From: Salpingoeca rosetta
Taxonomy: Eukaryota > Protista > Choanoflagellata
Reading direction: 5' to 3'
Assembly: GCA_033442325.1 (NCBI GenBank)
Contig: JAWQFM010000008.1
Location: 62,001-126,000, forward strand
DNA length: 64,000 nucleotides
In this document: positions 56,031 to 64,000 of the stretch, in pieces
How the letters are laid out: each line of letters starts with the position of its first letter
Numbering within the stretch: the stretch's first letter is position 1
Program-made: the position numbers and the translations under genes
Notes under the pieces: generated by a model
Seen by the model: only the letters and a program-made list of their open reading frames with translations
Databases searched by the model: none
Told to the model about the DNA's origin: nothing

Positions 56031-58198
<2,168 letters not shown>

Positions 58199-58236: not shown

Positions 58237-59075
58237 ATGCGCCGAACGCCGTCGTGGATGCTGCTGCTTGTTGTCGTGGGCGCATTCATTGTCTCTCCTC
58301 GACCCATTGGTGCAACGACCGACACTCATCATCACGCTGGTGAAGAGGAAGCGCACGAAGCTCGTGGAGGCAACGCCATCATGGCAGACACACACCTTCT
58401 CTCCGTCCAATACTGGTACAGGCCCGCCATGCTGTGGTGCTGCTGCTGTTTGTGCGATGGTGGTGGGTGGTGTTGGTGCTGCAGCTGATATTAGGACAGC
58501 ACATGATGTGATCACGCTTCCGCACCCCCATCACACATCCTGCCCATAACCTTGCCTCACATGTGTCTCCTCCACCACCTTTGGCCCCCTCCCGCTCTGT
58601 TCACTTTTTCACAAACACAGTGTTAGCTGAGGCTACCAGAATGCGTTCCAGCAACTGGAACACCGTCTTCAAGTGAGTGAACTAGTGTATGGCCTCTTTT
58701 CTTGTCGTCCACAGTCTCTGCTGCCATTGTTGTTGCTTCTGGCTCAGTCCGCCATCTCATCTTTGCTTCGCACTCTCCACCGATGCCCATCTTTGACGCC
58801 CACATGTTTCCTGACCCTTACCAATCCTCTCTGCAATGCTGCAACGAGCAGACCATCTACCCTGATCTGGTGATCAAGGGCGAGAACTACATTCCAAATC
58901 CAAACGTGCTGACCATTGCCAGCATCATCGACCTGATCAGCTGGACCATCATCCTCCTCATGCTCTTTGGGGACTACATCTTCAATGCCTTGGGCATTGC
59001 ACCTCCGAACCTCTACCTCCAGGCAAAAGAAAACTCGGTCAGTTGACGCGGTGTGCACGATATGCACGGTGCCAC

Positions 59076-59118
<43 letters not shown>

Positions 59119-59891
59119 GGTGTGTGTGTGTGTCGGTGTGTGTGTGTGTCGGTGTGTGTGTCGGTGTGTTTGTGCGTGTGTGCGTGCTTTTTTTTTTGTG
59201 TTTGTGTGTGTGTGCGCACGGTGCCGTTTGTGTGCGTGTGTGTGTGTGTGTATTCATGACGTCTGCACTAGCGGTTTTACTCTGTTCAAATGCACGTGCA
59301 CACACAGCTCTCCTTACCCACTGCTGTTACTCATAAACGGTGTCTTCGAATGCCCCACCCTGCTTGGACCTGCTATCTCGTGGTCCTTACACAGATGCTC
59401 GTCATTGTGATGACATTCTTCCTCTCCAACACCATCAAGCAAAACCTCCTCTCCACTGGCGCCTTTGAGATTGCACTCGACGGTGTGTGTGCATATCATA
59501 CCTGTGTGCGCGCGCGTGTGTGTGAATGAGTGTGAGAGTGTATTTATTTGCATATGTGTGAATGTGTGTGTGTGTGTGTGTCAATGAGTGTGAGTGTGTG
59601 TTAATTTGCGAATGTGTCAATGTATGAATGCTCGACTTCCCACCCGCTGTCTTTGTTCTCCAGAGTTGCGTCCATGTCACCCAGTCACACAAGCAGACAC
59701 AAACATGGTTCTTCTCTGCCTTCTCATCATCTTCCTCTCCCGCGATGCACACGGCACCACATCGACCTTCCCCGCCATCCCTGCCATACTTGCTTCCCCA
59801 AGGCGACCTTCTCTTCTCCAAGTTGGAGACAGGTCGTATGCCCGCGTGGCCAGAGCTCATGCGCACTCTCGACGTCAAGCTCAGAACTTGA
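58237..59891 (+). CDS. SELENOT: Selenoprotein T (thioredoxin-like Rdx family), 5 exons, in-frame UGA (Sec) at 58628-58630
   Basis: Exons 58237-58415, 58621-58672, 58852-59037, 59395-59482 and 59803-59891 total 594 nt, 197 aa. Protein: signal peptide [26 protein letters not shown]...QYC|VSUGYQNAF...|[13 protein letters not shown]...|...[11 protein letters not shown]|[31 protein letters not shown] and SKLETGRMP are SelT hallmarks. Confidence 0.95.
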
Positions 59892-61087
59892 TGCCGCGCT
59901 ATCGTGTGTATCTGTGTGTGTGTGAGTGTCTGTGTGTCTGTGTCTGTGTGTCTGTCGTTTTGCCTGTGTATGTGTGGTCTGTCTGCCTGTCTGTGTCTCC
60001 CTTGCATTTGTTGTCTCCCTTAGGTCTACACTGCAATGCATGCGGGATGTTTGAACATGTGCATTTAACGTGTCATGTCAAGCGTTCTGTGTCTGCAGGC
60101 CAACCCGCCACAGGCCGTGCACTGCTTAGTGTTGCTTGATGCACACGACCGGGAGGCGAGACAGGCATGTGTGTGAAGTGGTTGTCAGCGTTGTGATCCA
60201 CAGCTACCTCAATTGTCGTCCTGACAACGGTGCTTCGTGGTGATGGTGAGGGTCTTGGGTGTGCATTCACTCGCCTCGTTGCGTATTTTGAAGACGGCGC
60301 AACGAGCATGTGATTGCGTCACCCCCTCATGCTGACACCTCTTCGCCCTTGTGCCTTCTCTCCACTCCTGTTCTTGTCGCTTCTATTGCGCACCTGCTTC
60401 TCGCACCCCGGCTTGTGTCTGCGTGTGTGTGTGCATGTTGTGGTGTCGACTCTGATCAGTACACGGTTCAAAGAGAAGCCACTGCGCACACTTTACGTGC
60501 CACAAAAGGGAAAGCATACAGTTCCCAGCACACACACACACGCACACACACATACAGTTGCTTGGCACATCCTCAATCGTTCACCGTGCAAGTCTCGAGA
60601 ACATTTAATAGTGCCGTGTCACGTCATGTGGGAACAAGAGGATCAACCATTGGTTGTGTAAAACCATGTGTAACAAACACATGCTTCATCCAAAAGCAAG
60701 GTCACAGCGCACAGGATCGCGCGTTGCGCAGTCAAGCAGAACACAGCACACTCAGCAACAGTCGCGTACATCGGTGAAAGCATTGTCAGAAGAGAACACA
60801 GTAGTCTATCATAGCATAGGCATCACACACTGCGTGGCAGCAACAAGCAAGCAAGCAGAAACCAATTGGCGGCGCCCCTCCATGGCAGTATGGGAGGGAA
60901 CATGGAACAATGCATGATAGTATGAGAGGTGCACGCCAATCTCACTCAAAGGCGAATGTTGAAACACGTCGCATTCCGTCTGTTAAGAAGGATTAAGGAG
61001 AGAGCCCCGATGAGGTGCAGGCGTCTCAGTGGTAACAGACTCGCCGCGACAGACTGGCACGATGGCACACACACGTAAGGTGTGGCT

Positions 61088-61088
<1 letters not shown>

Positions 61089-61136
<48 letters not shown>

Positions 61137-61140
61137 CGAT
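61089..61140. repeat. (GAT)n trinucleotide microsatellite
   Basis: About 17 gat units. Confidence 0.9.
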
Positions 61141-61176: not shown

Positions 61177-63368
61177 TTATTCCTCATCTTCGTCATCACG
61201 CTGACGCTCCTTATCGACGCTGGCCGTGATGACTGCAATGATGAGACAGATGATCAAACAGGCGCAAGGAATGTACAGAGGAAGGGAGACGCAAAAGAAC
61301 AACCAAACAACACGCGTACAGCTTGTGAGGACACGCACACTTGATGCAACATGTACAGCAGCAAGGCAATGCGTGCGTGTGCTGTGCGTGTGCTGTGCGT
61401 GTGTGTCTGTGTCAACGGTGTCACATGACGCTCCAACACAGGGAGCCGTATGCACTCTGGGCATCATGTTTGAGACGAGGAAGAACAGAAGAACCATTGT
61501 TTGCGAGCAAGCCTGCAAGCAGTCGGTCTCAACGAACTCACGTGAGGCCACAAGGTCGGGGACTGCGCGGCAGATGGCAATGCTGCGGCAGCGAGTGCAC
61601 TTCTGGCCTGCCAAGGTCGAACAACACACGCACAAAACACGAAAAAGCAAAATTATTATAATGTTCATGTTGAGGACAAGAGTGATGGCGCCAGAGTCGT
61701 GACATGTAACCTTGGGGAAAAAACTTCCATGACAACACATCACGCCTGGTCCTCTTCATGAACGTGGGTTTTGTTCAGTGCTTGTTCATGATGGGATGGA
61801 GTGTTGGAGCGGTACGGCAACGATGTCCAGGAGTCAACGTACCACGGGGAAGAGATGGGTGGTAGTGCACTGGGGTGCAGGCGAACCCATTCTTGCATCC
61901 GCGTGGCATCACGTGCAGCGCTGTTGGAGAAGTGGTGCACCGTGCACATGACTTGAGTGGCTCTCCACAAAAGTGTTAACACACACATGCATCCATGCAT
62001 GCAAGTACACCACACATACACACACACACACACGCACAGACGAGACGCACGCCAATATGCACACACACACACACACACATGCACGCAAAACCCTAAACAC
62101 ACACACACACACACACACACGCTACACATACACACGTGTCCGTCTGAAATACATACCTGTGGTAAAGGCGGCAACGGTGGCTCTGTTTGGATCTGTGGCC
62201 ATGGCACGATCAAACTTGATCCACTTGCCAATGTCGTTGTAAATGCTGCAGTAGCACACACCACAAATGCTGCGTGCACAACACAGAGGACACACACCAG
62301 TGATGTACACGACGAGACACAACAAGCAAACAAGGGTCCGTCATTGAGTCATGGTACCACCTATCCATCTGCTCCACCAACCTTAACAGCACAACCACAA
62401 GCCAACAATATCATGTGGACCCCACTTCCTTCTCCACGTATGACGTCACAGTGAAAACTCCCACAAACCCAAGGGAGGGCAGCACACCAGCAGCAAACTC
62501 AAAGGCACACTGCAAACCAAACCACGCGTACTTTGTGTGCGATTCCCGGCCGGGGCCGTGGCAGACGGGACACATGGGCCGCTGTGCCCCCGTGGTCGCG
62601 GTGGCGGCTGTTGCTGTGGCGGTGGTAATTGGCACGGTGCCCACAGGGCCTTGAAGTTGGGCCAGCGCAGTGGAGGATGCAGTGGGGGTGCTCAGGCTTG
62701 CAATGTATGCTTGCAGCTGTAGGTCGGCAGGGAGGCTCGTGATGCTCAATGCATGGGCAGTATCGGAGGAGGTAGGTGCGGTGTTGCTGCTGCTGCTGCC
62801 GTGTGCACCGTTGTTGGCAGCAGAGGTCGCCGCAGCAGAGGTGGAAGTGAAGGTGGGGGTGGAAGCAGCGTAGCTGTACATGCTCCCTGTGCCAGAACTC
62901 ATCTCAGAGCGGACATCCCCGGCCTTCCACCGCTTGGTGGCAGGCGGGCCATCACCAGGCATGTAGGTGGTGTTTGTGTTGGTGCCGAGAGCAAGTGGCT
63001 GCAGCCCAGGCGCTGATGCCACAGACCAGTTGCGCGATGACGAAGAGGAGGACGAGGACGAAGACGGAGGGAATGATGATGTACTAGAGGCTGTGGGCTG
63101 CTGCGGTATTGTAGAAAGCGGAAGCGGAGTCAATGACAGCGAGGCAGCAGACGGCAGGGACGCCCCAAACGACTGCTGCTGTTGAGTTGTTGGTGGGGTC
63201 GCACTGCCGGTGTCGCTGGTCGCTGCAGTCGAAGGGGTGGCCTGGAAGAGGGCTTGTTGAAGGAGTGCCGTGTACAGCAGCGTGTCTGTGTCCATACCAC
63301 CACCCTGCATGCTTGCGTTAGCACTGGCGGCAACCAAGGCCGTGCGGATCAGCTCCAACTGCTGCGTG

Positions 63369-63405
<37 letters not shown>

Positions 63406-63979
63406 GCTGCTGCTGCTGCTGCGTCTGCGGCAGTAGGATCTGCCTGGCCTGGATGTCGGTAGCGCGCGGTGCCGTGCCCTGAAGCGGAGAAAGGACCTGG
63501 CTCATGAGAGTCACCGGAACGGATGACGGGTCCCGCGTGAACGCAGCGATGGCTGCTGTCGAAGGTGGCGACGTTTGACGGCGCTTGGAATGCACTGCAT
63601 GTGCTGTTGTGAGCGGCTCAGCATCGTCGAATGGGCTCTGGCCGTCACTGCTCATGCTGAACCGCCATTCGTCCTGCTGCTGCTGCTCGACTTGTTGTTG
63701 ATCATGGAGTGGTGGCTGAAACCCATGCTGTGCAAACCTGACGATGACCTGGGCAGCCTTCACAACGAGCTTGTGATGATGGTCCGTTGGAGGCAGCTTT
63801 CCGCATACATACGCGTCCACGACGCGGCCTGCGACGCGCAGCGAGTGCAGGGCATCACTGCTGGGCCGCGGGATGGCTCGTGGTGCCGGGGTCGAGGCAG
63901 GTGAAGGCGACTGTTGTTGTTGTTGTTGCTGTTGGATGGCAAACGTGTGTTCCTCGTCCTCCTTTTGTTCTTCTTCGTC
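61177..63979 (-). CDS. Partial gene (5' end outside the window): low-complexity Q/S/T/A-rich protein with a CxxC-H motif; downstream exons uncertain
   Basis: Acceptor ttgcag| at 63980. Long exon to about 62532 ending MCPVCHGPGRESHT. Next in-frame exon IYNDIGKWIKFDRAMATDPNRATVAAFTT at about 62246-62157. Possible terminal exon ...VDKERQRDDEDEE* ending at 61177. Confidence 0.5.
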
Positions 63980-64000
63980 CTGCAAACGGCGGGCGCCACG

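What the first reader, a model, noticed from the sequence alone, without database searches (positions are those of the whole stretch)
58237..59891. Hidden selenoprotein T: the CxxU redox motif is split across an intron and needs UGA recoding
Seen in sequence: exon 1 ends TAC TG|gt and exon 2 begins ag|T GTT AGC TGA GGC TAC, giving Y-C-V-S-UGA-G-Y. The frame after the UGA continues into clear SelT motifs, for 197 aa in total. Established: SELENOT carries CVSU and is about 195 aa in vertebrates. Inference: the UGA is decoded as selenocysteine. The ORF track and standard gene finders would truncate or mis-splice this gene.
Basis: partly seen in the sequence, partly recalled or inferred. Interest (0 to 1): 0.75.

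Follow-up and report, generated by a model that had tools for sequence, protein, structure and literature searches.

The report
Selenoprotein T gene with recoded UGA

Summary
Five GT-AG exons (58237-58415, 58621-58672, 58852-59037, 59395-59482, 59803-59891) read Y-C-V-S-TGA-G-Y, and the Cys codon is split TG|T by intron 1.

The genome is Salpingoeca rosetta. The deposited model PTSG_03057 (143 aa) starts inside intron 2 and lacks the redox motif.

Evidence for selenocysteine decoding:
- A spliced transcript-like contig and two genomic contigs of a close relative carry the same C-V-S-TGA-G-Y. The intron splits the same Cys codon, which differs synonymously (TGC vs TGT).
- A Cys-form insect SelT puts its second Cys on the TGA.
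- About 20 other SelT loci have TGA at this position.
- The genome encodes tRNA-Sec (67 bits, anticodon UCA), eEFSec and SepSecS.
- SPS2, GPx and SelK genes each carry an in-frame TGA at the conserved Sec position.

A GUGA-type, type 2 SECIS candidate lies 301 nt after the stop (60193-60244). It resembles the SPS2 element, but Rfam and my own covariance models do not detect it. They also miss positive controls.

The start codon is unresolved: 58237 (signal-peptide-like extension) or the conserved ATG at 58381.

Earlier first-stage notes flag other hidden selenoproteins (SelK, a deiodinase-like gene) in this genome.

Verdict: a new member of a known kind, of modest interest.

The parts
58237..58415 (+). 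It ends with the first two bases (TG) of the split Cys codon. 58237-58380 is an optional, signal-peptide-like N-terminal extension.
   Evidence: Translation; donor TG|gtacag. The extension has GC3 of 0.54 against 0.71-0.76 in exons 3-5, all frames are open there, and it has no similarity to the relative.
58381..58383 (+). Alternative start codon ([15 protein letters not shown]), conserved with the relative's first ATG (M-A-D-N...).
   Evidence: In L006 and L007 the ORF starts at MADN, with an upstream in-frame stop and no ATG in between.
58416..58620 (+). Intron 1 (GT...AG), which splits the Cys codon TG|T. The relative has an intron at the same position and phase.
   Evidence: The intron sequence is not conserved.
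58621..58672 (+). Exon 2: T GTT AGC TGA GGC TAC ... CAA. It is the most conserved exon at the nucleotide level (92% to the relative).
58628..58630 (+). In-frame TGA read as selenocysteine, the U of the C-V-S-U redox motif.
   Evidence: It aligns to the second Cys of CYSC in P0039. TGA is at the same place in L006, L007 and L008 and in about 20 other SelT loci.
58645..58661 (+). Perfect 7-bp hairpin (GUUCCAG-CAA-CUGGAAC) 14 nt 3' of the UGA; a possible SRE-like recoding stimulator. This is a lead only.
   Evidence: Folds. It is identical in the relative, and there are 0 of 10 synonymous changes in this stretch against a rate of 0.39 elsewhere (region chosen after seeing the data).
58783..58851 (+). 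Intron 2 sequence that the deposited model PTSG_03057 translates as its N-terminus (M-P-I-F-D-A-H...).
   Evidence: P0001 sequence. There is no counterpart in the relative's spliced contig.
58852..59037 (+). Exon 3, the hydrophobic middle segment typical of SelT. An alternative in-frame acceptor lies at 58849.
   Evidence: The junction LQ|TIYPDL matches LQ|NMYPEL in L006 and MEQRLQNLYPEL in P0002.
59395..59482 (+). Exon 4. Intron 3 (59038-59394, rich in GT microsatellite) is absent in the relative.
59803..59891 (+). Exon 5, with the true stop TGA at 59889-59891.
   Evidence: The Pfam Rdx hit covers P0001 residues 99-137.
60193..60244 (+). SECIS candidate of type 2: GUGA core 60193-60196, helix II, unpaired AA 60211-60212, mini-stem 60213-60217/60223-60227, and UGAU 60241-60244. 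It starts 301 nt after the stop.
   Evidence: Scanner results. It is the only hit in 128 kb under a filter defined from the SPS2 and L009 elements, where about 0.002 would be expected by chance in the UTR. Rfam and CMs R1 and R2 do not detect it.

Best explanation
The locus is the Salpingoeca rosetta orthologue of selenoprotein T, a membrane-associated thioredoxin-like oxidoreductase of the Rdx family. Its mRNA is spliced from five exons. The UGA at 58628-58630 is decoded as selenocysteine by Sec-tRNA(Sec) delivered by eEFSec, directed by a SECIS element in the 3' UTR. The most likely SECIS is the GUGA-type, type 2 stem-loop at 60193-60244. This gives a C-V-S-U redox centre immediately after the first beta strand. 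The protein is 197 aa if translation starts at 58237, or 149 aa if it starts at the conserved ATG at 58381. Shown here: the exon structure, the position and conservation of the TGA, family membership, and the presence of the Sec machinery. Inferred: that Sec is actually inserted, which element is the SECIS, and which start codon is used.
For: 2) Exon 3 is 100% identical to PTSG_03057/F2U448, which UniRef names Selenoprotein T and which hits Pfam Rdx at 29.2 bits against a cutoff of 22.6. There are 53 relatives, including proteins named selenoprotein T. 3) The insect Cys-form P0039 aligns in order to exons 2-5, and the second Cys of its CYSC lies on the TGA. 4) L006, an intronless contig of a relative with 66% aa identity, reads [34 protein letters not shown] and continues into the exon 3 equivalent. 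L007 and L008 are the genomic versions, with an intron splitting the same Cys codon, TG|C against TG|T. 5) After the TGA, 13 of 14 residues are identical, and the differences are mostly synonymous. 6) TGA occupies this position in about 20 SelT loci from metagenomes; one locus has Cys. 7) Machinery: tRNA-Sec at 67.1 bits with anticodon UCA; eEFSec domains at 42 and 79 bits; SepSecS as four colinear exon hits. SPS2 (KLKG-TGA-G|CKVPQQ), GPx (NTASG-TGA-GLA) and SelK (PPPMGGG-TGA-GR) each carry an in-frame TGA at the conserved Sec position. 8) The SECIS candidate has the same GUGA...AA...UGAU type 2 layout as the SPS2 3' UTR element (Rfam SECIS_1 13 bits) and the L009 element (25 bits). Its chance expectation is about 0.002. 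GUGA_AA is the dominant SECIS form in sponge and green algae, including sponge SelT (PMC3473315).
Against: There is no S. rosetta transcript, read or peptide evidence. Rfam SECIS_1 gives no hit in the 3' UTR, and two home-made covariance models miss the candidate. These tools also miss positive controls. The candidate's helix II has two bulges, its fold is not the minimum-energy structure in context, and my loose scanner is unspecific. One paper reported that no tRNA-Sec gene could be found in choanoflagellate genomes (PMC6188563); contradicts that.
Confidence: 0.9

Rival explanations
1. The gene is Sec-decoded as above, but translation starts at the conserved ATG at 58381. The product is then about 149 aa with no N-terminal signal peptide, and 58237-58380 is 5' UTR or promoter shared with the divergent neighbour.
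For: The relative's ORF starts at the homologous MAD. Only about 12 nt of transcript lie upstream of it, and the genome has an in-frame stop with no ATG before it. The extension has background GC3 (0.54 against 0.71-0.76), all frames are open there, and it has no similarity to the relative. ATG 58237 is only 38 nt from the neighbour's ATG on the other strand.
Against: The extension reads like a textbook signal peptide (basic start, 12 hydrophobic residues, then S-P-R-P). Animal SelT proteins carry about 55 residues, including a hydrophobic N-terminus, before the redox motif (P0028 and P0039). The relative's contig may be 5'-incomplete.
Confidence: 0.35
2. The deposited 143-aa model is right: translation starts at ATG 58783 and the protein has no redox motif. 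Exons 1-2 would be unrelated sequence.
For: It is the public annotation, and the frame is open from 58681 to 59043.
Against: The relative's spliced contig joins the exon 2 equivalent directly to the exon 3 equivalent. The stretch 58783-58851 has no counterpart there. An Rdx protein without its CxxC/U centre would lack its catalytic site. The transcript-derived ORF P0002 carries EQRLQ before LYPEL.
Confidence: 0.03
3. The UGA terminates translation, so the gene is a pseudogene or yields only a short peptide.
For: UGA is a normal stop in this genome; this gene's own stop is also TGA. No curated model recognises a SECIS.
Against: The frame, the residues and a mostly synonymous substitution pattern are conserved downstream of the TGA between species. 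TGA is conserved at this site across many SelT genes. The full Sec machinery and other Sec-type genes are present.
Confidence: 0.03
4. The TGA is an assembly or sequencing error for TGC or TGT, and the protein is a Cys-form SelT.
For: Cys forms exist (P0039; L024 with CVSC).
Against: The 14-nt string around the TGA is identical in three independent assemblies of the relative and in the window.
Confidence: 0.02

Closest known systems
Animal selenoprotein T (SELENOT), an ER-resident thioredoxin-like selenoprotein with a CVSU redox centre
   Same: Same family (Pfam Rdx; best named hits are SelT). The C-V-S-U motif is identical (the motif is documented in SELENOT papers found). It has the same hydrophobic middle segment and conserved C-terminal G-A-F-E...S-K-L-E-T-G-R block, and a similar length if the 58237 start is used.
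   Different: Only about 35-45% identity to animal sequences. The N-terminal signal peptide is not established. The SECIS core is GUGA rather than AUGA.
Sponge (Amphimedon queenslandica) SelT and SPS genes with GUGA_AA SECIS elements (Jiang et al. 2012, PMC3473315)
   Same: Early-branching holozoan lineage, a Sec-form SelT, and the GUGA_AA SECIS pattern.
   Different: I could not compare the sequences directly. The S. rosetta SelT element has a bulged helix II and is only a computational candidate.
Insect Cys-form SelT-like protein (CG3887 homologue, P0039)
   Same: Colinear alignment over exons 2-5, with CYSCGY against CVS-TGA-GY.
   Different: It has Cys instead of Sec, so it needs neither a SECIS nor recoding.
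Sec redefinition element (SRE) of SEPN1, a stem-loop just 3' of the UGA (Howard et al. 2005/2007, cited in PMC3541580)
   Same: A hairpin close to the 3' side of the Sec UGA, inside coding sequence, with suppressed synonymous change.
   Different: There is no covariation, since the two sequences are identical. The fold z-score is not significant. The spacing is 14 nt. No function has been tested. Whether SelT has an SRE rests on my memory only; the primary paper was not available.

Membership tests
Selenoprotein T (Rdx family, PF10262) | Significant match to the Rdx profile | tested here: met
   P0001 (exons 3-5 of this gene as deposited) scores 29.2 bits, E 1.1e-6, against a cutoff of 22.6. 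Single exons are too short to hit on their own.
Selenoprotein T (Rdx family, PF10262) | CxxU or CxxC redox motif directly after the first beta strand | tested here: met
   Y-C-V-S-TGA-G-Y spans exons 1 and 2. It aligns to CYSCGY of P0039 and to C-x-S-TGA in about 20 SelT loci.
Selenoprotein T (Rdx family, PF10262) | SelT-specific hydrophobic segment between the redox helix and the C-terminal half, and closest relatives being SelT rather than SelW or SelH | tested here: met
   Exon 3 aligns to residues 76-136 of P0039. Named hits are 'thioredoxin reductase-like selenoprotein T'.
Selenoprotein T (Rdx family, PF10262) | N-terminal signal peptide or ER targeting | tested here: inconclusive
   The signal-like stretch 58237-58380 is open but has background GC3, is not conserved, and is absent in the relative.
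Eukaryotic selenocysteine-encoding gene | In-frame UGA at a position where homologues have Sec or Cys, with coding conservation downstream | tested here: met
Eukaryotic selenocysteine-encoding gene | Stem-loop with SECIS consensus geometry (RUGA quartet, helix II, unpaired AA, N-GA-N) in the 3' UTR | tested here: met
   The element at 60193-60244 is the best candidate in the UTR even under relaxed rules. It is the only hit in 128 kb under a filter set by independent S. rosetta elements, with about 2 hits per Mb in shuffles. This is a computational candidate only.
Eukaryotic selenocysteine-encoding gene | SECIS recognised by a curated or trained covariance model | tested here: inconclusive
   There is no Rfam SECIS_1 hit and no R1 or R2 hit. 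However, SECIS_1 finds nothing in 13 TGA-bearing SelT contigs and scores the SPS2 element at only 13 bits. R1 and R2 also miss known elements.
Eukaryotic selenocysteine-encoding gene | Genome encodes tRNA-Sec, eEFSec, SPS2 and SepSecS | tested here: met
   tRNA-Sec at 67.1 bits with anticodon UCA. eEFSec on C28. SPS2 on C8 with its own Sec TGA. SepSecS on C22.
Eukaryotic selenocysteine-encoding gene | SBP2 and PSTK present | not tested
   No family-specific profile was available that would discriminate them exon by exon. SBP2 is reported for Monosiga brevicollis (PMC2746813).
Eukaryotic selenocysteine-encoding gene | Selenium actually incorporated at the UGA | not testable with these tools
   This needs 75Se labelling or mass spectrometry.

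The most novel reading that the evidence does not exclude
The perfectly conserved 7-bp hairpin 14 nt downstream of the Sec UGA (58645-58661), together with the small hairpin that presents the UGA in its loop (58624-58635), is a Sec redefinition element. It would help a weak, GUGA-type SECIS recode UGA in choanoflagellate SelT, which would place SRE-type elements before the origin of animals.
Probability: 0.2. Interest if true: 0.5.

Novelty: new member of a known kind. Interest (0 to 1): 0.3.

Why it matters
It corrects a public gene model (PTSG_03057 / UniProt F2U448) that lacks the catalytic selenocysteine of the protein it is named after. Together with the tRNA-Sec, eEFSec, SepSecS, SPS2, GPx and SelK loci found here, it shows that S. 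rosetta, a main model for animal origins, has a working selenocysteine system. That runs against a published statement that no tRNA-Sec gene could be found in choanoflagellate genomes (PMC6188563). It also suggests that the GUGA-type SECIS seen in sponges extends to the sister group of animals. None of this changes how selenoproteins are understood; it is careful re-annotation.

Tried and rejected
1) Pfam on single exons found nothing because the pieces are too short. The whole-genome six-frame Rdx search also found nothing.
2) The protein atlas with exon 3 gave no usable hit.
3) ARAGORN does not see the tRNA-Sec that Infernal scores at 67 bits.
4) Rfam SECIS_1 on the locus, and on a 161-nt stretch around the candidate, gave no hit. 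This was shown to be uninformative.
5) MAFFT alignments of SECIS elements were not structure-consistent.
6) The covariance model from the SPS2 element alone (R1) and the one from two SelT elements (R2) were too sequence-specific. They missed positive controls as well as the candidate. The third model was not built.
7) My loose SECIS scanner alone is unspecific: 11 hits per 128 kb, and 8% of shuffles.
8) The strong scanner hits at 62848 and 63524 (+) were rejected. They lie antisense inside the coding region of a convergent gene (62411-63985, minus strand), 3 kb away.
9) Plain and constrained MFE folding of the 3' UTR does not return the SECIS fold. It fails for L009 too, so it is not decisive.
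10) I could not find a convincing SECIS for the GPx gene on C17 or a strong one for SelK.
11) The public record could not be fetched by exact-protein look-up.
12) The Howard 2005 paper was not available.

Full report
WHAT IS THERE. Exon 1 (58237-58415) ends CAA TAC TG followed by gtacag. Exon 2 (58621-58672) follows cacag and begins T GTT AGC TGA GGC TAC, with the TGA at 58628-58630. Exon 3 is 58852-59037, exon 4 is 59395-59482, and exon 5 is 59803-59891, ending in a TGA stop. All introns are GT-AG, and the frame runs through 197 codons with the single internal TGA. Exon 3 has a tandem acceptor: 58849 or 58852, both in frame.

ORGANISM AND PUBLIC ANNOTATION. Exon 3 is 100% identical to a 143-aa protein of Salpingoeca rosetta: PTSG_03057, EGD82414.1/XP_004995650.1, UniProt F2U448, which UniRef names 'Selenoprotein T'. 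It hits Pfam Rdx (PF10262) at 29.2 bits but has no redox motif. An earlier follow-up note of this scan had also named the genome S. rosetta, and I confirmed that independently.

HOW THE SEARCHES WERE DONE. I never assembled, searched or folded the joined five-exon protein, nor any protein read through the stop. For full-length relatives I used the deposited partial protein P0001, which a tool returned. No contig looked human.

THE TGA IS A SEC CODON: COMPARATIVE EVIDENCE. P0001 finds 53 SelT-family relatives. Most are mispredicted around the redox motif, but the insect Cys-form P0039 (CYSCGY) is intact. By tblastn it aligns in order to exons 2, 3, 4 and 5, with its second Cys on the TGA.

The strongest evidence comes from a close relative with 66% aa identity, sampled three times. 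L006 is an intronless, transcript-like contig that reads [34 protein letters not shown] and runs straight into the exon 3 equivalent. L007 (a TARA metagenome scaffold) and L008 are the genomic versions. They have introns at the homologous positions of introns 1, 2 and 4, including the intron that splits the Cys codon, here TG|C against TG|T in the window, a synonymous difference.

The 14-nt string around the TGA is identical in all four sequences, which rules out a sequencing error. After the TGA, 13 of 14 residues are identical. In the rest of the gene, substitutions are biased toward synonymous sites: 30 synonymous differences among 77 conserved codons. Intron sequences are not conserved.

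A metagenome scan gave 75 further SelT-like loci. Where the motif region is visible, about 20 have TGA at this position and one has Cys (L024, CVSC).

SEC MACHINERY.
- tRNA-Sec: at G000:C34:611578-611663, 67.1 bits against a cutoff of 47, E 8e-14, with a 9-bp acceptor stem, a long variable arm and anticodon UCA. ARAGORN misses it. This may be the same kind of miss that led PMC6188563 to report no tRNA-Sec gene in choanoflagellate genomes.
- eEFSec: on C28, domain III at 42 and 29 bits and the eEFSec-specific fourth domain at 79 bits.
- SepSecS: four colinear exon hits on C22.
- SPS2: on C8 with its own in-frame TGA (K-L-K-G-TGA-G, intron, C-K-V-P-Q-Q) at C8:994027-994029.
- Other genes with an in-frame TGA at the conserved Sec position: a GPx on C17 reads N-T-A-S-G-TGA-G-L-A, and SelK on C3 reads P-P-P-M-G-G-G-TGA-G-R.
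- SBP2 and PSTK were not tested.

SECIS. This is the weakest link.

What the model-based tools say. Rfam SECIS_1 finds nothing in the SelT 3' region. Genome-wide it gives only two identical sub-threshold hits (25 bits, L009/L010), which have a GUGA core.

What the scanner finds. My geometry scanner finds a type 2 element at 60193-60244, starting 301 nt after the stop. It has GUGA, then 14 nt to an unpaired AA, then a 5-bp mini-stem, and UGAU on the 3' side. Inner dG is -13.2 kcal/mol. The SPS2 3' UTR holds an element of the same layout about 535 nt after its stop, which SECIS_1 aligns as a SECIS at 13 bits.

How specific this is. The loose scanner is unspecific. Under a filter defined from the two independent S. 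rosetta elements (GUGA, UGAU, AA at 12-14 nt, dG of -13 or lower), the SelT element is the only hit on either strand of the window. Dinucleotide shuffles give about 2 hits per Mb, so about 0.002 would be expected in the UTR. The -13 threshold is slightly generous to the candidate.

Calibration. SECIS_1 finds nothing in 13 SelT contigs that carry the in-frame TGA. My scanner recovers clear type 2 elements in several of them and in further SelT loci (L028, L038, L040-42, L044/45, L037, L097, L098). So the Rfam negative carries no weight, and type 2 with AA followed by a mini-stem is the usual SelT form. GUGA_AA is reported as the main SECIS pattern in green algae and in the sponge Amphimedon, including its SelT and SPS (PMC3473315).

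What did not work. Two covariance models I built (R1, R2) were too sequence-specific to be informative. Stronger scanner hits at 62848 and 63524 lie antisense inside a convergent gene and were rejected.

START CODON. Against it: the relative's ORF starts at the ATG homologous to 58381 (M-A-D), with an upstream stop and no other ATG. The extension has background GC3 (0.54 against 0.71-0.76). Every frame is open there, so an open frame means nothing. And 58237 is only 38 nt from the divergent neighbour's ATG. I rate the two starts about 60:40 in favour of 58237 on family architecture. This is unresolved.

A LEAD. Exon 2 is 92% identical at the nucleotide level to the relative, against 67-80% for the other exons. 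The ten codons after the motif show no synonymous change, against a rate of 0.39 elsewhere (p about 0.007, region chosen post hoc). They form a perfect 7-bp hairpin 14 nt after the UGA in both species. This resembles the SRE of SEPN1. However, there is no covariation and the fold z-scores are not significant.

VERDICT. SelT is one of the most widespread eukaryotic selenoproteins. Choanoflagellate selenoproteins and SBP2 were already reported for Monosiga (PMC3753652, PMC2746813). Mis-annotation of Sec genes is routine. It is a new member of a known kind. Its value lies in re-annotation and in documenting the Sec system of S. rosetta. First-stage notes of this scan flag other hidden selenoproteins in the same genome (SelK, a deiodinase-like gene), and I verified the SelK TGA myself.

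Noticed in passing
L001:1501-1586 (G000:C34:611578-611663, +): A tRNA-Sec gene at 67.1 bits with anticodon UCA. ARAGORN does not see it. A published survey (PMC6188563) reported that no tRNA-Sec gene could be found in either choanoflagellate genome.
   Followed up: yes
L004:1103-1105 (G000:C8:994027-994029); SECIS-like element at L002:2966-3014: The selenophosphate synthetase SPS2 gene has an in-frame TGA at the active site (K-L-K-G-TGA-G, intron, C-K-V-P). A GUGA-type, type 2 SECIS lies about 535 nt after its stop.
   Followed up: yes
L012:1534-1536 (G000:C17:394400-394402): A glutathione peroxidase with the classic N-T-A-S-G-TGA-G-L-A active site. I could not find a convincing SECIS in its roughly 880-nt 3' region, which is full of CA repeats.
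   Followed up: partly
L099 and L102 (G000:C3:1395100-1396580, minus strand): A SelK gene with P-P-P-M-G-G-G-TGA-G-R near its C-terminus. There is only a weak GUGA-type stem-loop downstream, at C3:1395126.
   Followed up: partly
L009:1501-1560 (-) and L010 (G000:C1:2346662 and C1:2354181): Two identical SECIS_1 hits (25 bits, GUGA core) lie 7.5 kb apart, next to a 139-nt tandem repeat. The gene they serve was not identified.
   Followed up: no
L040:1488-1539 and L044:1046-1098: Some metagenomic SelT mRNAs carry a second, GUGA-type SECIS-like stem-loop about 150-190 nt downstream of a strong AUGA-type one.
   Followed up: no
window 57900-58198 (minus strand): A divergent neighbour whose ATG (58198-58196) is 38 nt from ATG 58237. 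It opens with an 18-nt tandem repeat that is open in several frames (K-P-P-L-K-A units in the ATG frame). It bears on which SelT start codon is real.
   Followed up: partly
window 59038-59394, 59483-59802 and 59892-59990: Long (GT)n microsatellites fill introns 3 and 4 and the start of the 3' UTR. Intron 3 is absent from the relative's gene (L007).
   Followed up: partly
window 58846-58851: Tandem NAGNAG acceptor (gagcag) at exon 3. The two choices differ by one Gln codon.
   Followed up: partly
window 61090-61137 and 62411-63985 (minus strand): A (GAT)16 repeat, and a convergent 524-codon ORF on the minus strand rich in Gln and Ser runs. They limit the SelT 3' UTR to roughly 59892-61000.
   Followed up: no
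L020-L022 (G000:C28:840060-841632) and L016-L019 (G000:C22:1202161-1203642, minus strand): The eEFSec and SepSecS genes of S. rosetta, detected exon by exon.
   Followed up: partly
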